DNA of 64,000 nucleotides from Lytechinus pictus (Eukaryota), in the NCBI RefSeq assembly GCF_037042905.1, contig NC_087251.1, positions 37,882,001 through 37,946,000 of the forward strand, given 5' to 3'. The notes under the pieces were generated by a model. It did no database searches. It was not told where the DNA came from and saw only the letters and a list, made by a program, of their open reading frames with translations. Of the stretch, positions 39,201 through 47,815 are shown one piece after another. The first letter of the stretch is position 1. Each line of letters begins with the position of its first letter. The position numbers were made by a program, and so were the translations under genes.

Positions 39201-42200
39201 GCCTTATTAACACAATCTTCTATTGACAATAAGATATCGATATTATCTCTAGAATTGTCATCTCAAAATATAGAAATATGGTGTAAATGGAGATAAATAT
39301 ACCAAGCAAGCCAACATTTTGATTTGAAGCATGATTTCATTCGATAATCAAATGGAGTGATGAAATGATAGCCACAATTACCCAAAGTTTGTTTCATTGT
39401 TTTATAGTCTATATGAAAATGAAGTTCATTGGCCTTCAAATACTCTTGTACAATCATGACCCACTTTGATATTTTTTTCTTTAAGACTTTATCTCATTTC
39501 ATACATGTACAGAGCAGCATGAGTGCTCGATGGAAACCATTCAGAGTGGGTACATCCTAGCATATGGCCAAATATATAGCTGTGCCAATTTCACAGTATT
39601 TACACTAAAATTCACCTGAAATCATAATACATCCATCTACATATAGCACACCTAGTTCATGTTCAACTTCACTTAATTCTCAATATATCCTATTTTTACC
39701 TAGGCTAAAGCTAAGCTGCAACATAGGTACTAAGCGGGGGGGGGGGGGGGATTACATGGGGGTTTTGGGGGGGATTTTGACCCCGAAATACTCAAAAGAG
39801 CCCTGGAAAATCCCCATTCACTGCAATGTTAAAGTTTATCCAATATTGCAGATTGAGGCAGTAGATCATGAAAAGCAGCCCCCCAAAATAAATAAAAAAT
39901 ATATATAAATATTTTTTGCTTGTACTAGAGCACTCAAGGAATTAATCCTCCCGGAATCATAAAAGGAATAGCCCAACACACAAGTCAGAAGCTGGGAATG
40001 CTCTATTTCGGAAGTTTAAATCAAGTGTTTGGGGTTCTTTCTTTCAAATTTGCAGTATACCTTCAAAATAAAAGGATGTTTGTTTGTTTTTTATTTCAGA
40101 AAGAGTAAGGTGTACATAATGATCCAAATACAAGAGAAAGTGGATGAAAAAAAAAATAATAATAAATCCTAAATAAATAAAGATATGAATAAATAATAAA
40201 CAAATAAAATAAATAAATAAACAAGTAAGTTAAGGTTGAGAGTTGTACTCACTGACTCCTGGACTCCGCATATCTATCAGCTGGAGGGTAGTCATAGTAG
40301 TCCCTGTTATATGACAGAACAAACCAACATTTGAATATTATTATATAGATGATAAATGTGTTATGAGTGCAATGAATCATTTCATATTTCACTGAATGAA
40401 CAATTCTGTCCATTGCACAAATGTTAAGTCTGATAATGGTGAAGTCTGAAACATCGACTAGGAATAAAAAACTAAATGGCCATTTAAATATGGCATTGCT
40501 ATATTAAATTTTGTATTGGCAACTTGATTAGATTTCGAAAAGTGGCAAGGACAACTCCCCCATTGGTCATGTACATTTATGTATTAGGACTCTCTCTCCT
40601 GTACTGGTAGTGTTTCCCTTTATATGCTTTGAGTAGTAATAAAAATAGAAAGCATATTATCATGAGTCTTAAAGGAGAATGAAACCCTTGAAACCAGCTT
40701 AATTCATATCAAAGAGAAAAATCAAAGAAACATGTTGTTGAAAGTTTGAGGAAGATTGAATGAATAATAAGAAAGTTATGAGCATTTGAATATTGAGATC
40801 ACTAATGCCATGTAGATCCTCCCATTGGCAATGCGACCAAGATCTATGATGACACACACGTACAACTCCCTCATTACTTTAGTACTTATTTCACTTATAT
40901 TCTCACTTTTATAGTCTATCACAAGGTAAGGTGTTCTCTTTATGAGAGGACAAGTACAGAGGTTTCACATTATATCATTGATGAATTGTTTGTCATATGA
41001 TTAGAATGAGCAAAAAGAGATGTTTTGGGGTATATTTTCAGTGTCCAAAAGGGGAGAGTTGTTCATCTGTGACATCATAGATCTTGGTCGCATTGCCAAT
41101 GGGAGGATCTCCATAGCATTAGTGATCTCGACATTCAAATGCTCATAACTCTTCTATTTCTAGTCCTATTTTACTCAAACTTTTGTTGATCTTATTCTTT
41201 GATTTTTCTGCTTTCACAAAAGCCAACTTACTCCAAGAGTTTCATTCTCCTTTAATAAAAGATAATAATTGCAATTTCCAAAAGATACAAAGCGATTTGA
41301 GAAAAACTTCTTGTTTTTTTTAAGATAATTTTCTAGTCATTTTGTGTATGGGAACAAAAATCAAATGGTCTTTACCCTAAACACTACGACATCACATATG
41401 TGGCCAATATGACATCCCCATACATATAGAAATTGCAACTTAATACAAGTTTTCAAGATTGTTTCTCTGGTTTTTCTTTTTTTTTTTCCTTGACAAAACA
41501 ACTTTTCATTTGGGTTGGAATCTGGTTTAAATTGTTAATGTCTGTTCACGGTTTTCTGTTGACAATTCCAGCAAGTCAGTCCTCATGAACATTGCTACTT
41601 CAATAGTTTGTCTATTTTGAGTGATGAAAGGTGCACAGATTATAGTAAAGTAAACCCTCAATGTGAATTAAGAACTTCACAAACACAGTGCAAACTCAGG
41701 GGAATATCTGGGGGAGTGTTTATGAAGCAAATAATGCTTTTCCGCTGACAAATTTGCTCTCAACCAATCAGATGCAAGGATTTCAGTTGCTTATAACAGT
41801 GGTCAGTGAAAATCAATGACCATTTGCTTCATAAAAATGCTCCCCAGTGATAAACAAACGTGCATAACTCGACAATCTGGGGCTGTTTCACTGCAACACT
41901 TTGCCATGCATTATAACCAACATGCAACACATAACTACATTGATGACTGAGCAATAGCGCAGGGGGAGCGTTTCATAAAGCTGTTCGTAAGTTAAGAGCG
42001 ACTTTAAGAACTGGTGATCCTTTCTTAACATGCAAAACCATCGCTTATGAATATACTATTTGCCATAAGAAAGGATCTCCAGCCTTAACTTGTTGCTCTT
42101 AACTTACGAACAGCTTTATGAAACACCCACCAGGTCCCACAAGCAAATAAACTAATTGAATGCAATTATTTTGAATAAGTGCAGATTTATATCACACTAA

Positions 42201-45200
42201 ACTCTTTGTACATGCAACAACCCCATGGAGTTGTAATGCACAAGTACAGTCAAATCTGTCTTAGCAGCCATCTGTTGTCACCTTCACTGTCTCCCATTGG
42301 ATAGGAATATGTATGATTGAAACTGTCTCAAAAGGCCCCTAATTTTACAAAAAGGTAGTACATGTACATTAAAGTTTAAATAAGTCAACCTTCCATCCAT
42401 AAATAGAATAATTACCTAAGGCACCTTACCAAAATTACCTTACCAGTGCTGTGTCTTTCATGCAGGAATCATGCAAACATAAAATTAAATTTCATTGCTA
42501 TTCCCAACATGAAATCAAGGTACCTTTCATGGCAACTTTTCTATATGATTCCATATTGCTATGTCTATAAAAAACATGAGCAATGATGGATGATTCAAGA
42601 CACTTGTATGATTCCTGTGAGAAAAACCTTGCTCTGTCTTGTGGGTAAGGTGCTGAAGAAATTTCATCCAAGATTATAAATGCAAAGATTGTATTTGCCT
42701 CTTCTTACCAAATTTGCCTTTGAGCCAAAGACAATGGAGTTAAAAATGAATTTCTTGAATATACATAACAATTTACAGTGTTAATAAATATAAATTAGTT
42801 CACAAAAACATGCTTCACACTGAAGTTAAATCAATTATTGAAGGTCAAATTCATTTTGACATGCACACATTAAAATGGGTTCAAAATTCAAACAATTCTC
42901 GTTGCAGCCATTACAGAGTTGCAACTTTCACAGATTTTTTCAAGGCCTTGTGACTTGCAATAAATTTATATGAAATAAAGCTAAGGCAAAAAACATAGAA
43001 GTTAATTCGAAATTTAAGGCCACTGTTATGTGGGCAAAATAATTTGATGGCGCAAGCATACAAATAATTTTACACGAATAGACAGACTGCGTTCATAAAA
43101 GTTGAGCAACATTTATAGAAAACCAGGGGATTTTATTATCAAATCACTGTCCTTTTTCTATGCAAGCAAGGGAAAACTTTGGGATGATTTGCTAACTGCT
43201 ACAATCAAACTCGATAAGATAAAATCAATTCCATGGGATTTAATTGGTTTGACAGTTGCCTTCTTCTGCCTGATTGTACAGTCACACCAATGAGACCGAC
43301 TCCAGACCGATCAAAGCTATTACATTATTTCCAATGGCACATCATTGGTCCGTTTGGAGACTGTTTCGTTAGTGTGTAATGGCTACAACGTTGATTACAA
43401 CAACAACAAATGCTAGTTTTTTTTTTGGGGGGGGGGTGATGCAAGAAAATATTGCATTCAATTGCAAATTTCCGTTGTAGTTTGACAACTGATTAATCAC
43501 TTTTAATTATTGGTATTGATTTATTTACTTGTTGCAAGAAGCAAAGTGCAAATTTGCAATTAATTGCAAGACATATGATGATTTTTTTTTTACCTATAAA
43601 AGACAAACAATTGATTGCAAGTTTCTTGCAACACCCCATTAGTATTAAAACAAACATGTTATTAAAATCAATGCAATGAAAATATTAGTCTTGTTAGAAC
43701 CCACCTAGGAGGTGGAGGTGGAGAATCACGTCTCCTGTACCTTGGTGGGGTCAAGGGTCGCCTTCCTGGTGGCGGGCTTCGGCTCCTTGTTCTGTAAGGG
43801 TCGCGGGGGTACGGGTCACGGGAGTATTCATGGTACGGATATGGAGGCGGTCGCCTGTTAACATACAGGGATGATACAAAGTTGTTGAGTTATGCATAAA
43901 GATCCAGGACTCCATAATTAATACAAAGGTTAGCGAATCATCATGGGCTGATCTTTACAACTGATTGCATTGATTATTGTGTATGATCAATTATAAATAT
44001 CTGCTCCACAATCAATCAATACATTGTATGTTACAGGGTATCAATATCGAGTGTCTACTTGTATGCATAGACTTTATGTGCTTAATAAATCCTGAAAGAA
44101 AATGTGTAATTAATGACAAACTGGCATGGGATATTAAAACATTATTTATTTTTTCTTTAAGTATAATCTATGCAACTACATTTGTGATCAAATTAGCTTT
44201 AATACAATTTTCGTTCACTACGATAAATCCAATGACTTACTAAAAGTTGGATAAAACCTTGATTTTCATTGGCTGCTGAGCTCCGTTACCATGGTAGTTA
44301 CCACACTGGCGAATTGGTTATAATTGTGTTTATGAAATAGGGGCCCTATTACAGATCAATACTATCCATAAAAATATGATTATCAAAATGGTGTACCTGT
44401 AGTAGTCCTCATAGTAGCGATCGTAGTACGGGTCAGGTGGTGGCGGTCTGCGAGACCCATAATCTCCGTATTCCCTGTCTTTGTATTCTCCAGGGTGATC
44501 TCGACTTCCTCCTCGACCACCTCTGAAACCTCCTCCCCCTCCTCCTCGACCGCCTCCATCACGGCCACCACCTCGACCACCACCTCCGCGTCCGCCTCGG
44601 CCTCCCCTTCCGCCGCCGCCTCCACGGCCGCCACCTCCTCGGCCGCCACCTCTGCTTCCCCTTTATAAAAAACATTAATAGAAAGAGATAAATGTTGGTG
44701 AAACAAAGGCTTGGGGTAGTGTTACTTTCATGAAGCACTTTGTCAAGAATTAGTTTGTCCTGACGTCTGAGCCAATCAGAAGCAAGGTTTTCAGTAGCCT
44801 ACAGCTGTCAGTGAAAACCGTTACTTGTGTCATGGAATGCTCAATAAGTATCATATAAATACTCTGTGATGAAATGGCTTAAAATATGGACAACAGGGTT
44901 AACCCAAATACATCTTACAAATTACAAGACACTGATCAAGTTACAACAGAATTTTACAGCTTATTCTATGATACATGTACATGTACGTAAAATTAACATT
45001 GATTAAATAAGCACTCTGATAGCCTGATTTATTTCAACTTATTTGGATACAGATTTGCCCATCTTATGGGGCATCGCAAGAAAACCACAATCAATTTCAA
45101 GCCCATTAGAAATCACAGAATCAATGCCTTTGAAATCATTGGTAATTTTGTACTTGACAAAAAAGGATGTGCAAACTGATTTACTACAGCTAAAATTGAT

Positions 45201-47815
45201 CTTGCAAATTTAAATTGCAGCAAAACTTTGTAATTGATTGCATATAATTTCTTGCAACACCCTCTACGAGCTTAATTATCCTGTCCATTTATAATATCAA
45301 CACTGGAAAGCCTCATCACATTAACATACAAATAATCATCATCATAATAATAACGATATGAATAATGCTAATGATTTATTGGACTTAAATCCACTCTGTA
45401 GAGTGCTCAAGGCACTTTCCTAGAAATCAAGAAGGATGTTAAGAATTGAACAGAAATGTTTTACTTGTATCTTGAAAGTCTTAGTTTTTCAATGTCTTCA
45501 AAAAGGCTTATCCATAACTTAAATGATGAGTGGACAAACGACCCCCCCCCCCAGATTTTGGCGATGACTTAAGTATACAAGAAAAATAGTTTTGTTTGTC
45601 CAAGGAGATATTAAAAATTGCATGCTGTTTATCCAGTATTGTTCTGTATATATTAGATTGACTTTGGCAGCATGGTAGCCTGCCCTATTTCCGAAAAAAT
45701 CACCAAACCGATATATTGACCGGGATAGAGGCAAGCGTTAATCTCGAGGTGCAGCACTGGACGCGCGGCGCGCCAAGTCTGCTTACCTCCCGTTATCACG
45801 GCAGTCGCGAGAGAAGTGCCCCATTTTACCGCACGAGAAGCATTCTCCACTGTTGCCCACACCAGTCGTTTTGTGCACGGTGGATGTGGACATTTGAACC
45901 TGGATAACGTTCCCCAGGAAATCAGTCTTGTCTAGCTGAGTGACCGCCTCTTGGCATTCTGTTTCTGTTGCCATGTGCTTTAATAAGAGAAGGGGCCAAT
46001 GATTGGGAATAAGAAGGTAAATGATCAGAATCCGAGGGATAAGACCAAGATAAGAGAACAGCAAAGCTTCTGGTCCACACAATCACCGACTACTTTGGCT
46101 ATGCTATAGCCAAAGCAAATGTGTTTTAATTCCGAAACCGAACATGCATCTTTCGACAGGATAGCACCTACAACACGTCCAATGGATGACAGAAGCTTTG
46201 CTGCTCTCGAATATGATTTAAAAAAGAATTTACTATGAGACTTACGGCTCTTTTCGTTCAGTTGAGGTAGAGTGTTGTACCCTGATTGTATTACCATACA
46301 ATCTATGACCACCAAGTTTGTTAACTGCTTCCAAAGCCTCCTCTATAGTTGACATGTGCTAAAACAAACAATTTAAAACCATCGAAGCAATATCAAGAAC
46401 AAGATTCTTAAAACTGAATTTCCCTTTTACCTGCCTCACAAAATAACATGAGATGAATCCAAATTCAAATAAAATGCCATCTAGACAAAGGTGGAAAATG
46501 CAATTTAGTGCATTTTTTACCCATAAATTTTGTTCAAATTAAGCAACAAATATATTCAGATCACAAAATAATAGAGCTTCGAACTGTAATGCTGGAAATT
46601 CACCAATAAGACATATCTGGATATTAATTTGTGAACATATCTTGGAACATTTTAATGAGGAAGAAATTGAGTCGAGGCATTGCATTAAAGAGTCTAACAT
46701 TCATACTTTTATATGCTTTTCAGTTCACACTCCATTTCCTTAACCCCATACTATCCTTAACCCCGCAATATCTTTTTTGGTTTCACACTGTCTTTCTTAA
46801 CCACATACAATTTGCTTAGCCAGGGTTAAAGCCGTAACCGCGGACTATCGCACAGCTCATGAATATTGATGATTTTGCCACAGAGAGCGTGATTATTGTC
46901 CAATTTTGACTTCTGTAATTGGCTAATGCTTAGCCCCACTCTTCCTTAGCCCGGTTTCATTTCACACTGCATCTCTTGGCACCGCAATTGTGGTGCTAAC
47001 ACCCAATTAGCTTGCTATCCCTGCTTTTTTGCAGGGCCAGATAGTACCATACTAATTACTGTGCTAGCCCACTAGTTTGCTAACACATGAAGAAAAACGA
47101 AGTGGGCTAAGCTTAACCCCGGGATATTGGTGGGGCTAAGCCCCCCCCCCCCAAGCCCCACCAATTTCCCAGGGTTAAAGAAAATGTGTGCAGGGTGAAA
47201 AGCATATTATATTCATTAAACATTATTTTATTTCAAAGGTTGTACATGAATGTTTTAATTACAGACCTGCCCTCCCATTAATGGCACTAGCTTTGCATGA
47301 AAAAAAGAACATTTCATTTAATCGAGTATGAACATTTTTCCCCCCTATTTCGTAAAAAAAAAACACAATTTGCTCTACTTCATTAATGGTTAATACCCTA
47401 CTATATTTCTTCAATGATTATTAAAGATTACTCCAATTTACATCTAAAAGGTGCTTATCAATACAAACTTTGCATATTAATAAGTCACAAATTTTCATTT
47501 TCATATGCTTGTTGTACTCTGTAATTTGTAAAATTATCTATATTTGCAACATTTGTACCTAAATTTCCAATAGCATTTACAATTTATTTCTCATGACATT
47601 TATGGTATTATATAGATTTATACATATATACCAATGCTTGTCATCAAGTTATTTGAAAATGAAAAGAAATAAACTGAAACTATAAAACTCACCACAAATC
47701 CATAATTCTTGAGAACATCACATTCTACTACTTTTCCTACTGTTTGGAAAAGCTCCTTCAGGTCATCGTTTGTAACTCCTTGTGGCACATTACCCACGAA
47801 CAGCTTTTTCGCCAT
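35997..47815 (-). CDS. lark: RBM4/lark-family RNA-binding protein (RRM + optional CCHC zinc knuckle + RGG + RS/PY-rich tail), alternatively spliced
   Basis: Exons 47815-47693, then 46358-46246 OR 45977-45787, then 44660-44397, 43854-43705, 40303-40253, then 39013-38959(stop) OR 36207-35997(stop). All introns GT-AG and phase-compatible. KLFVGN...ECDVLKNYGFVH and VQMSTS...GVGNSGECFSCGKMGHFSRDC match RBM4/lark. Confidence 0.85.
38959..39013 (-). CDS. lark: lark/RBM4 proximal terminal coding segment
   Basis: cccctacag|C YPPPRARYSPPRQTSAF*, resembling the vertebrate RBM4 end RARYSAF. Confidence 0.72.
40253..40303 (-). CDS. lark: lark/RBM4 51-nt exon
   Basis: ataacag|G DYYDYPPADRYAESRS CA|GTGAGT. 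Confidence 0.8.
40673..41251. mobile_element. Kolobok-type MITE in a lark intron
   Basis: TTAA|aggagaatgaaacccttg ... caagagtttcattctcct|TTAA; near-perfect inner arms gatcctcccattggcaatgcgaccaagatctatgatg. Confidence 0.85.
41960..42133. mobile_element. Palindromic MITE, same family as 3716-3891
   Basis: gtttcataaagctgttcgtaagttaagagc / gctcttaacttacgaacagctttatgaaac. Confidence 0.75.
43705..43854 (-). CDS. lark: lark/RBM4 R/P/Y/S-rich exon
   Basis: 150 nt, phase 2 to 2; RPPPYPYHEYSRDPYPRDPYRTRSRSPPP. Confidence 0.87.
44397..44660 (-). CDS. lark: lark/RBM4 RGG-box exon
   Basis: 264 nt, phase 2 to 2; GSRGGGRGGGGRGG...RRPPPPDPYYDRYYEDYY. Confidence 0.88.
45787..45977 (-). CDS. lark: lark/RBM4 alternative exon 2b (RRM2-type C-half + CCHC zinc knuckle)
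   Basis: cttctcttattaaag|CAC ATG...HMATETECQEAVTQLDKTDFLGNVIQVQMSTS...CFSCGKMGHFSRDC, ends AG|GTAAGC; phase 0 to 2. Confidence 0.92.
46054..46208 (-). other. Structured intronic RNA element between exons 2a and 2b
   Basis: 19-bp stem 46208-46190 / 46072-46054 and 12-bp inner hairpin 46117-46091. The only non-Watson-Crick pairs are G-U on the minus strand. Confidence 0.7.
46246..46358 (-). CDS. lark: lark/RBM4 alternative exon 2a (RRM1-type C-half)
   Basis: tgtttgttttag|CAC ATG...HMSTIEEALEAVNKLGGHRLYGNTIRVQHSTSTERKE, ends CC|GTAAGT; phase 0 to 2. Confidence 0.85.
46714..47204. mobile_element. MITE in the lark intron between the first coding exon and exon 2a
   Basis: ta|tgcttttca ... tgaaaagca|ta; internal ttcacact and ttaacccc/ttagcccc repeats. 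Confidence 0.6.
47693..47815 (-). CDS. lark: lark/RBM4 first coding exon (RRM N-half, RNP2 and RNP1)
   Basis: gccATGG; MAKKLFVGNV...KNYGFV|GTGAGT (phase 0). The exon starts at 47850 after tattttattag, so an upstream non-coding exon exists. Confidence 0.92.

What the first reader, a model, noticed from the sequence alone, without database searches (positions are those of the whole stretch)
46054..46208. Multi-branched RNA structure filling the intron between the two alternative exons
Seen, on the pre-mRNA strand: GAGAGCAGCAAAGCUUCUG pairs with CAGAAGCUUUGCUGUUCUC (19 bp, one G-U), extended by UCCAU/GUGGA. It encloses a GUGUU/AACAC arm and a 12-bp hairpin UGCUUUGGCUAU-AGC-AUAGCCAAAGUA. The wobbles would be A-C mismatches on the other strand, and no TSD or repeat-family match is evident. 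Folding removes 155 of 268 nt, leaving about 66 nt between the 2a donor and a candidate branch point (UUCUGAU, A at 46025). Inference: a cis-element enforcing mutual exclusivity or binding a regulator (possibly the protein itself); alternatively an ADAR substrate or an intronic ncRNA.
Basis: partly seen in the sequence, partly recalled or inferred. Interest (0 to 1): 0.8.

Follow-up and report, generated by a model that had tools for sequence, protein, structure and literature searches.

The report
Conserved RNA stem between two alternative exons
In a sea-urchin gene for an RBM4/lark-type RNA-binding protein, the short intron between two mutually exclusive exons carries a long RNA stem that is preserved, with compensating base changes, in a distantly related sea urchin, so it most likely helps control which exon is used.

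Summary
On the pre-mRNA (minus) strand, 46208-46190 pairs with 46072-46054 (19 bp, one G-U), extended by 5 bp. The 155-nt domain folds at -66.5 kcal/mol (z -7.5). It is single-copy in the 812-Mb genome and has no Rfam match.

RNA-seq confirms the setting:
- Exon 1 joins either exon 2a (613 reads) or exon 2b (130 reads).
- Each of these joins exon 3.
- No 2a-2b junction is listed.
- The intron has no stable RNA and no antisense reads.

Against Strongylocentrotus purpuratus, every other intron is unalignable. Exon 2a, this whole intron and exon 2b form one 723-nt conserved block. The closing stem keeps 23 of 24 pairs, with one C-G to U-A double change and three one-sided compatible changes. It shows 0/48 polymorphic arm sites against 11/68 inside the domain.

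The inner branches are not conserved.

Best reading: a selected cis-acting pre-mRNA helix that shapes mutually exclusive splicing, closest to the ATE1 and srp systems. How it acts is unresolved. Reading-frame surveillance alone could enforce exclusivity. The transposon, editing and ncRNA readings find no support.

The parts
46190..46208 (-). P1a, 5' arm of the closing stem (GAGAGCAGCAAAGCUUCUG)
   Evidence: Inverted repeat I1; folds; conserved in S. purpuratus with a C to U change at position 14 that is compensated in the 3' arm.
46054..46072 (-). P1a, 3' arm of the closing stem (CAGAAGCUUUGCUGUUCUC)
   Evidence: A G to A change compensates the 5' arm change. No arm position is polymorphic in the nine S. 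purpuratus-clade haplotypes.
46182..46186 (-). P1b, 5' strand of the 5-bp extension (UCCAU)
   Evidence: C-G becomes U-G and U-G becomes U-A in S. purpuratus, so both stay paired. It is in the RNAalifold consensus.
46074..46078 (-). P1b, 3' strand of the extension (GUGGA)
46090..46118 (-). 12-bp inner hairpin, lineage-specific (part of a 31-nt insertion absent from S. purpuratus)
   Evidence: There is no near copy elsewhere in the genome.
45978..46245 (-). Intron between exon 2a and exon 2b (268 nt)
   Evidence: Splice junctions; sequence.
46246..46358 (-). Exon 2a (113 nt): RRM C-terminal half without the zinc knuckle; the major form
   Evidence: Junctions 47693/46358 and 46246/44660. It corresponds to S. 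purpuratus isoform X3.
45787..45977 (-). Exon 2b (191 nt): RRM C-terminal half plus the CCHC zinc knuckle; the minor form
   Evidence: Junctions 47693/45977 and 45787/44660. It corresponds to S. purpuratus isoform X1.
45702..46402 (-). Continuous block conserved with S. purpuratus: exon 2a, the whole intron, exon 2b and about 85 nt downstream
   Evidence: blastn gives 723 nt at 75.5% identity, while all other introns of the gene give no alignment.
46332..46341 (-). H1 candidate: exon 2a segment complementary to the P1 5' arm (46191-46200). 10 bp, -12.0 kcal/mol, mutually exclusive with P1.
   Evidence: Present at the homologous place in both species with two compatible changes. Tentative.
46283..46291 (-). 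H2 candidate: exon 2a segment complementary to 46077-46085, just 5' of the P1 3' strand. 9 bp, -8.1 kcal/mol.
   Evidence: Conserved, with an A-U to G-C double change. Tentative.
46143..46148 (-). UGCAUG (Rbfox-type motif) inside the P1-closed domain
   Evidence: It contains one of only two GCAUG in 4.3 kb of the gene. S. purpuratus has two UGCAUG inside its domain, at non-homologous places.
45980..46066 (-). AG-free stretch (87 nt) from the P1 3' arm to the exon 2b 3' splice site. It holds the candidate branch points: conserved UUUAC at A46018 and CUYAU at A46010.

Best explanation
P1 is a cis-acting pre-mRNA helix of about 24 bp (19 + 5). It closes a 117-155-nt domain in the intron between the two mutually exclusive exons of a sea-urchin lark/RBM4-like gene. 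It is kept by selection because it helps set the exon 2a / exon 2b splicing outcome.

Shown:
- The exons are used in a mutually exclusive way, with 2a at about 76-90% of exon 1 junction reads.
- The helix is the dominant predicted fold.
- It is single-copy, and no stable RNA accumulates from it.
- It is conserved, with compensatory and wobble-compatible changes on the sense strand, across a divergence at which the gene's other introns no longer align.

Inferred mechanism:
1. P1 forms as soon as its 3' arm is transcribed and compacts the intron.
2. The exon 2a 5' splice site (37 nt upstream of the helix) and the exon 2b branch and polypyrimidine region (starting directly below the helix) are then held together at the helix foot.
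3. Once exon 2a is defined, its bound U1 complex interferes with U2 assembly on exon 2b, so the 2a donor goes on to exon 3.
4. The P1 5' arm and the segment next to the 3' arm can instead pair with exon 2a itself (H1, H2). This weaker, earlier-forming state would mask exon 2a and let exon 1 join exon 2b. This resembles the competing R1-R3 and R3-R4 pairings of ATE1.
5. Any double inclusion or double skipping shifts the reading frame and would be removed by nonsense-mediated decay.
For: - Fold and statistics.
- Single copy, no terminal-repeat family.
- No Rfam family.
- Junction reads: e1-2a 90/135/127/261; e1-2b 29/34/39/28; 2a-e3 102/133/82/62; 2b-e3 35/27/30/1. No 2a-2b joint appears among those listed. 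Depth over the stem is 0, and there are no antisense reads.
- Orthologous loci from the S. purpuratus genome and eight Logan contigs.
- Only this intron aligns between the two urchins.
- Four-fold sites differ at 10/17 in exon 1, whereas the P1 arms differ at 6/48.
- 23 of 24 pairs are kept, with one double and three single compatible changes; the G5-U151 wobble is kept in both.
- Simulation: P = 0.014 that six random substitutions keep at least 23 pairs.
- 0/48 arm sites against 11/68 inner sites are polymorphic in the S. purpuratus clade, Fisher p = 0.0025.
- The S. purpuratus domain folds with the same stem, z -5.2.
- H1 and H2 are conserved at homologous places, H2 with an A-U to G-C double change.
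- Frame analysis: stops at codon 93 (both exons) and codon 74 (neither).
- ATE1 precedent of a hairpin inside the intervening intron competing with an exon-looping pairing: PMC7797038.
Against: - Only two independent lineages could be compared, so the covariation rests on one double change in P1.
- The nine S. purpuratus-clade sequences come from one genome and one study.
- P1 overlaps no splice site, branch point or polypyrimidine tract, so it masks nothing directly.
- With the conserved branch-point candidates, the folded donor-to-branch distance is about 72-80 nt (about 93 nt in S. purpuratus). That is above the roughly 40-50 nt at which steric block is established (my recollection of the alpha-tropomyosin case).
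- By the usual rule, looping out intron sequence should help, not hinder, 2a-2b splicing.
- H1 and H2 have about zero equilibrium probability against P1, and helices of 9-10 bp are common by chance.
- The flanks of 2a and 2b show no duplicated selector-like elements.
- Both exons are 2 mod 3, so decay of frame-shifted products could give exclusivity without any structure.
- The whole block, exon silent sites included, is constrained. The arms could therefore be conserved for reasons other than pairing.
Confidence: 0.6

Rival explanations
1. The intron is conserved because it is packed with linear splicing-regulatory motifs: Rbfox-type UGCAUG, CU-rich PTB/RBM4-type tracts, and the branch and polypyrimidine signals of a weak exon. 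The stem is then incidental, or only a scaffold that presents those motifs near both exons (an 'RNA bridge').
For: The whole 723-nt block is constrained, including silent sites of both exons and the domain interior, not just the arms. UGCAUG occurs once inside the window's domain and twice inside the S. purpuratus domain at non-homologous places, while GCAUG is otherwise rare in the gene. An 87-nt AG-free pyrimidine-rich tract follows the stem.
Against: The arms are the least variable part: 12.5% different against 21% for the interior and 55% for the flanks, with 0/48 polymorphic. Their changes keep pairing, including one double change and wobbles that only work on the sense RNA. The window's UGCAUG is mostly paired in the predicted ensemble, with unpaired probability 0.18.
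Confidence: 0.2
2. It is a decayed miniature inverted-repeat transposon or a neutral palindrome with no function.
For: The window is rich in transposon-derived inverted repeats: 22 pairs within 400 nt in 64 kb. The other folds of equal stability in the window are such repeats. The window-specific 12-bp hairpin shows that palindromic insertions do arise here.
Against: BLAST finds only the element itself in the 812-Mb genome. The arm sequence occurs at the chance rate: 11 other hits with 2 mismatches against about 9 expected from my own estimate, and never as a pair. No target-site duplication is visible. It sits at the orthologous place in a species whose neutral sites are near saturation, with pairing kept.
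Confidence: 0.04
3. It is a double-stranded RNA substrate (A-to-I editing, or binding of a dsRNA-binding protein), or the precursor of a small intronic RNA.
For: It has a 19-bp perfect duplex extended to about 24 bp, which is at the lower end of known editing substrates.
Against: Depth over 46080-46201 is zero in three rRNA-depleted total-RNA runs, and there are no preferred ends. No Rfam family matches at E up to 10. The shape, a long closing stem around a 60-117-nt variable interior, is not that of a microRNA or snoRNA precursor. Editing could not be assessed for lack of intronic reads. In ATE1 the equivalent helices were tested and were not ADAR substrates (PMC7797038).
Confidence: 0.06
4. 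It is a DNA-level element, such as a transcriptional enhancer or another protein-binding palindrome, that happens to lie in this intron.
For: From my own knowledge, conserved non-coding patches between distant sea urchins are often transcriptional cis-regulatory modules. The centre of the window's stem is a DNA palindrome (AAAGCTTT).
Against: Four pairs in the two species are G-U wobbles, which would be A-C mismatches on the other strand or in a cruciform. The central palindrome is lost in S. purpuratus while the pairing is kept by a double change. The conserved block coincides exactly with the alternative exons and their flanks.
Confidence: 0.05

Closest known systems
Human ATE1 exons 7a/7b: competing R1-R3 and R3-R4 pairings (Kalinina et al. 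2021, PMC7797038)
   Same: There are two homologous mutually exclusive exons. A conserved element in the intervening intron forms a hairpin with a second element in the same intron, upstream of the downstream exon. It can alternatively pair with a site at the upstream exon. In ATE1 the stronger helix predicts the preferred exon. Here P1 is by far the stronger helix and exon 2a is the major form.
   Different: In ATE1, R1 and R4 overlap the 3' splice-site regions and are duplicated copies of one sequence. Here the P1 3' arm ends 76 nt upstream of the exon 2b acceptor and masks no signal. The candidate competitor lies inside exon 2a, and no duplicated flank is detectable. Nothing here has been tested by mutation.
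Drosophila srp exon 4.1/4.2 dual pairings, and the Dscam1 / 14-3-3-xi docking-selector systems (Yue et al. 2016, PMC4691838)
   Same: Conserved intronic elements lie in the intron between duplicated mutually exclusive exons, and base pairing with covariation decides exon choice.
   Different: Those pairings run between different introns and loop out an exon. P1 lies wholly within one intron and loops out only intron sequence.
Steric-hindrance mutually exclusive exons: alpha-tropomyosin exons 2/3 (recalled from memory) and OGDH exons 4a/4b with distant branch points (PMC7969005, seen as an abstract only)
   Same: A short intervening intron and a long AG-free pyrimidine tract (87 nt) precede the downstream exon. 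If the branch point lies at the foot of P1 (CUUAU, A46051), folding would place it about 40 nt from the exon 2a donor.
   Different: The linear intron (268 nt) is long enough to splice. Hindrance would exist only in the folded state. The branch point is unmapped, and the conserved candidates give 72-93 nt.
Dscam1 iStem and Rbfox 'RNA bridges' (recalled from memory)
   Same: An intra-intronic or long-range helix changes exon inclusion by changing pre-mRNA architecture or by bringing a bound regulator close. UGCAUG motifs lie inside the closed domain in both species.
   Different: No evidence here that any protein binds. The motif positions are not homologous between the species.

Membership tests
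RNA-structure-controlled mutually exclusive splicing (docking/selector, ATE1 type) | A cluster of homologous exons used one at a time | tested here: met
   Exons 2a and 2b are homologous RRM C-halves. Junction reads show e1-2a, e1-2b, 2a-e3 and 2b-e3, and no listed 2a-2b joint. S. purpuratus RefSeq isoforms X1 and X3 match.
RNA-structure-controlled mutually exclusive splicing (docking/selector, ATE1 type) | Conserved complementary intronic elements with covariation | tested here: met
   P1 keeps 23/24 pairs, with 1 double and 3 single compatible changes; simulation P = 0.014. Only two lineages were available.
RNA-structure-controlled mutually exclusive splicing (docking/selector, ATE1 type) | One element has two or more alternative partners, each tied to one exon (competition) | tested here: inconclusive
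   H1 (exon 2a x P1 5' arm) and H2 (exon 2a x 46077-46085) are conserved and exclude P1. They are only 9-10 bp and have about zero equilibrium probability. No duplicated selector was found in the flanks.
RNA-structure-controlled mutually exclusive splicing (docking/selector, ATE1 type) | Disruptive and compensatory mutations change and restore exon choice | not testable with these tools
   Needs a minigene or embryo experiment.
Steric-hindrance mutually exclusive exons | The branch point of the downstream exon lies too close (under about 50 nt) to the upstream exon's 5' splice site | tested here: inconclusive
   The linear distance is over 190 nt. Folded distance is 40 nt (A46051), 66 nt (A46025, not conserved) or 72-80 nt (conserved candidates A46018 and A46010). 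The branch point is unmapped.
Frame-enforced (nonsense-mediated decay) mutually exclusive exons | Inclusion of both exons or of neither shifts the frame and creates an early stop | tested here: met
   The exons are 113 and 191 nt, both 2 mod 3. Stops arise at codon 93 (both exons) and codon 74 (neither), each upstream of further junctions. Actual decay was not tested.
Miniature inverted-repeat transposon | Many related copies in the genome | tested here: not met
   Only the element itself is found at E up to 10. Arm-pattern hits are at the chance level and unpaired.
Miniature inverted-repeat transposon | Target-site duplication flanking the terminal repeats | tested here: not met
   The flanks read ...GATAA / GAATA..., with no direct repeat.
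Intronic small RNA (snoRNA, microRNA) or other Rfam family | Covariance-model match, or a stable processed RNA | tested here: not met
   No relevant Rfam hit at E up to 10. Depth is zero in three rRNA-depleted runs. Small-RNA libraries were not examined.
ADAR editing substrate | A-to-G differences in RNA reads over the duplex | not testable with these tools

The most novel reading that the evidence does not exclude
The helix converts a splice-competent 268-nt intron into a sterically incompetent one only when it is folded. This would be 'fold-induced steric hindrance'. The 2a donor and the 2b branch site are clamped at the foot of a rigid 24-bp stem, so both cannot be occupied at once. Weaker pairings of the same intron segments with exon 2a (H1, H2) act as the switch that frees exon 2b. 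That would be a structural mechanism for mutual exclusivity distinct from docking/selector competition and from fixed short-intron hindrance. It would operate in a splicing regulator that swaps half of its own RRM and gains or loses its zinc knuckle.
Probability: 0.15. Interest if true: 0.75.

Novelty: new member of a known kind. Interest (0 to 1): 0.55.

Why it matters
RNA structures that govern mutually exclusive splicing have been proven mainly in insects and in a few mammalian genes. My searches of the held paper library turned up no report of one in echinoderms.

This stem is compact and single-copy, and it has already passed a first covariation test. It sits in an organism where antisense morpholinos and mRNA or minigene injection into embryos are routine. 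Whether an intra-intronic helix that masks no splice signal can enforce or bias exon choice is therefore directly testable here.

The gene is also of interest in itself. It is a homologue of RBM4/lark, which I recall regulates alternative splicing, and the switch replaces half of its RRM and adds or removes its zinc knuckle. The stem may thus control the RNA-binding specificity of a regulator.

If the stem proves irrelevant, the locus would still be a clean example of reading-frame-enforced exclusivity.

Tried and rejected
- **Transposon reading:** rejected by the genome BLAST, the arm pattern scan and the hairpin-core scan.
- **Rfam:** only a chance bxd_1 hit at E 5.8 on the other strand.
- **Stable intronic RNA or antisense transcript:** rejected by zero depth.
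- **Duplicated selector elements:** local alignments of the upstream and downstream flanks of exon 2a against exon 2b are not better than shuffles in either species.
- **Second copy of either arm:** none found elsewhere in the gene.
- **RNAduplex on whole blocks:** gave uninformative full-length duplexes, so I replaced it with an exact-helix scan.
- **More orthologues:**
  - The word-indexed protein search with the exon 2b region found only the query.
  - The profile search and the S. purpuratus protein search gave no other echinoid.
  - Exact look-ups of window ORFs were not in the collection.
  - The metagenome scan gave only a spliced transcript from a third echinoid, with no intron.
  - One ENA contig had no DNA available.
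- **Holothurian locus:** it has exon 1 and a single 2b-like exon but no exon 2a, so it offers no comparable intron.
- **Second run search with the intron alone:** the related organism B holds only 2-3 of 24 sampled words, which is uninformative.
- **Paralogues in the own genome:** none; the other hits are retroelement zinc knuckles.
- **The count of structure pairs:** not used. The pair table was computed in a script instead, to avoid typing a long bracket string.
Full report
**The sequence.**
The gene runs on the minus strand. Its exons are as follows:
- Exon 1 (47815-47693) encodes the N-terminal half of an RRM and ends ...KNYGFV.
- Exon 2a (46358-46246, 113 nt) encodes one version of the C-terminal half.
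- Exon 2b (45977-45787, 191 nt) encodes another version, and also carries a CCHC zinc knuckle.
- Exon 3 starts at 44660 and encodes an RGG-rich tail.

The intron between 2a and 2b is 46245-45978 (268 nt). On the pre-mRNA strand, 46208-46190 pairs with 46072-46054. This gives 19 bp with one G-U, which would be an A-C mismatch on the other strand. The UCCAU/GUGGA extension and the 12-bp hairpin are also present.

**Is the fold more than chance?**
- The 155-nt element folds at -66.5 kcal/mol, z = -7.48. The opposite strand gives -52.9.
- In a 901-nt context the stem's pairs have probability about 1.0.
- The window holds 22 inverted repeats within 400 nt, and the other two loci of equal stability are transposon-like. 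A stable inverted repeat alone therefore proves little in this genome.
- This element, however, is single-copy in 812 Mb.
- The arm sequence occurs at about the chance rate and never as a pair.
- The hairpin core has no close copy.
- There is no target-site duplication and no Rfam match.

**Transcripts.**
I used four RNA runs: three rRNA-depleted runs from the window's species, and one from a relative with fixed differences in about 1-3% of exon positions. The junction reads are:

| Junction | Reads in the four runs |
|---|---|
| exon 1 - 2a | 90 / 135 / 127 / 261 |
| exon 1 - 2b | 29 / 34 / 39 / 28 |
| 2a - exon 3 | 102 / 133 / 82 / 62 |
| 2b - exon 3 | 35 / 27 / 30 / 1 |

- No 2a-2b joint is among those listed, and the weakest listed joint has 4 reads.
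- Exon 2a therefore accounts for about 76-80% of exon 1 junctions in the window's species, and about 90% in the relative.
- Depth over 46080-46201 is 0 in the three total-RNA runs, and there are no antisense reads. No stable RNA comes from the element.
- Editing cannot be judged, because no reads cover the stem.
- Both exons are 2 mod 3. Including both gives a stop at codon 93, and skipping both gives a stop at codon 74. Nonsense-mediated decay could therefore remove mistakes.

**Who has it.**
An exhaustive protein search with exon 2b returned an ORF-type prediction, P0001. It reads through the orthologous intron of another sea urchin, which gave the DNA. The nearest named proteins are S. purpuratus 'RNA-binding protein 4.1':
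- Isoform X1 carries exon 2b.
- Isoform X3 carries exon 2a and lacks the knuckle.

The exon switch is thus already annotated there. I fetched the S. purpuratus genome locus and eight further contigs from one resequencing study. A holothurian locus has exon 1 and a single 2b-like exon but no exon 2a. The duplication is therefore younger than the split between echinoids and holothuroids. A metatranscriptome contig shows the exon 1-2b form in a third echinoid, but it carries no intron.

**Conservation.**
- Between the window and S. purpuratus only exons align, with one exception. A continuous 723-nt block (46402-45702) covers exon 2a, the entire intron, exon 2b and about 85 nt beyond.
- Neutral divergence is high. 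Four-fold sites differ at 10/17 in exon 1, but only at 3/14 in exon 2a and 5/25 in exon 2b.
- Within the element, differences are 6/48 in the arms, 14/68 in the interior (plus two indels), and 15/27 in the immediate flanks.
- Among the nine S. purpuratus-clade sequences, 0/48 arm columns vary against 11/68 interior columns (Fisher p = 0.0025).

**Covariation.**
Of 24 pairs, 23 are kept:
- C14-G142 becomes U-A, a change on both sides.
- A2-U becomes G-U.
- C24-G becomes U-G.
- U27-G becomes U-A.
- Only the terminal G1-C is lost.
- The G5-U151 wobble is kept in both species.

Six random substitutions keep at least 23 pairs in 1.4% of simulations. The S. purpuratus domain (117 nt) folds with the same closing stem, z -5.2.

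The interior, by contrast, is not conserved as structure:
- The 12-bp hairpin lies in a 31-nt insertion that S. purpuratus lacks.
- The GUGUU strand falls in a 7-nt indel.

The conserved yUnAy candidates are UUUAC (A46018) and CUYAU (A46010). An 87-nt AG-free tract runs from the 3' arm to the acceptor.

**Mechanism.**
The evidence shows a selected sense-strand RNA helix in the one conserved intron of the gene, between two exons that are never joined to each other. How it acts is inference. It masks no splice signal.

- *Compaction model.* Folding brings the 2a donor (37 nt above the helix) next to the 2b branch region. The folded distance is 40-80 nt, depending on which branch point is used. 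A steric block is therefore possible but not indicated by the conserved candidates.
- *Competition model.* A scan for helices present at homologous places in both species found, besides P1, two pairings of exon 2a with the P1 5' arm and with the segment next to the 3' arm. These are H1 (10 bp, -12.0 kcal/mol) and H2 (9 bp, -8.1 kcal/mol). H2 shows an A-U to G-C double change. Both exclude P1. This recalls ATE1, where a hairpin inside the intervening intron (R3-R4) competes with a pairing at the upstream exon (R1-R3), and relative stability sets the exon ratio (PMC7797038). It also recalls srp (PMC4691838).
- *Caveats on competition.* H1 and H2 are short and have negligible equilibrium probability. 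No duplicated selector is detectable.
- *Motif model.* UGCAUG motifs inside the closed domain of both species, at different places, suggest a possible Rbfox-type input.

**Verdict.**
The closing stem is real, non-repetitive, conserved and covarying. I read it as a new echinoderm example of RNA-structure-linked mutually exclusive splicing. The multi-branched interior, the 12-bp hairpin and the 66-nt calculation are lineage-specific details. The ncRNA and transposon readings are rejected, and editing is untested. Confidence that the stem is a functional splicing element is about 0.6. Confidence in any one mode of action is well below that.

Noticed in passing
window 46246-46358 and 45787-45977 versus 47693-47815: Silent sites of both alternative exons are about three times more conserved with S. 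purpuratus than those of constitutive exon 1 (3/14 and 5/25 against 10/17 four-fold sites different). This points to RNA-level constraint inside the exons themselves.
   Followed up: partly
window 46012-46021 with 45782-45791: The exon 2b branch/pyrimidine region (UUUACCUUCU, resembling the 5' end of U1 snRNA) is complementary to exon 2b's own 5' splice site (GGGAG|GUAAG). The helix is 10 bp, -10.6 kcal/mol, and would loop out the whole exon. S. purpuratus keeps only about 6 bp because of a 3-nt insertion.
   Followed up: partly
window 46079-46087 with 45939-45947: The intron segment just 5' of the P1 3' strand is complementary to exon 2b (H3, 9 bp, four wobbles; stronger in S. purpuratus). 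It overlaps the segment that pairs with exon 2a (H2). One intronic site with a partner in each alternative exon is an unusual arrangement, if it is real.
   Followed up: partly
window 46143-46148; L025 3875-3880 and 3936-3941: UGCAUG motifs lie inside the stem-closed domain in both urchins, but at non-homologous positions. This may be motif turnover.
   Followed up: partly
window 46690-47299 (intron 1), including the inverted repeat 47113-47137 / 47154-47178: Reads from both strands, with many mismatches, odd joints and loose ends. This is a repeated element inside intron 1, with a 25-nt-arm hairpin as stable as the finding. It is not conserved with S. purpuratus.
   Followed up: no
window 44738-44859 (intron 3), loose ends at 44766 and 44798: A short stretch covered on both strands by reads that run on into unrelated sequence. 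It is probably a fragment of a dispersed repeat expressed elsewhere.
   Followed up: no
L024 449-577 and 1466-1642; proteins P0013, P0151, P0155: The sea cucumber has a single exon 2 (2b-like) and no exon 2a. Starfish orthologues carry two full RRMs plus the knuckle, whereas urchin, sea cucumber and brittle-star proteins have one RRM.
   Followed up: partly
It did not appear among the helices conserved in S. purpuratus.
   Followed up: partly
window 43648-43859 and 40241-40321: Further downstream coding exons of the same gene align with S. purpuratus. RNA reads leave exon 3 at 44397 towards the 43853 region.
   Followed up: no
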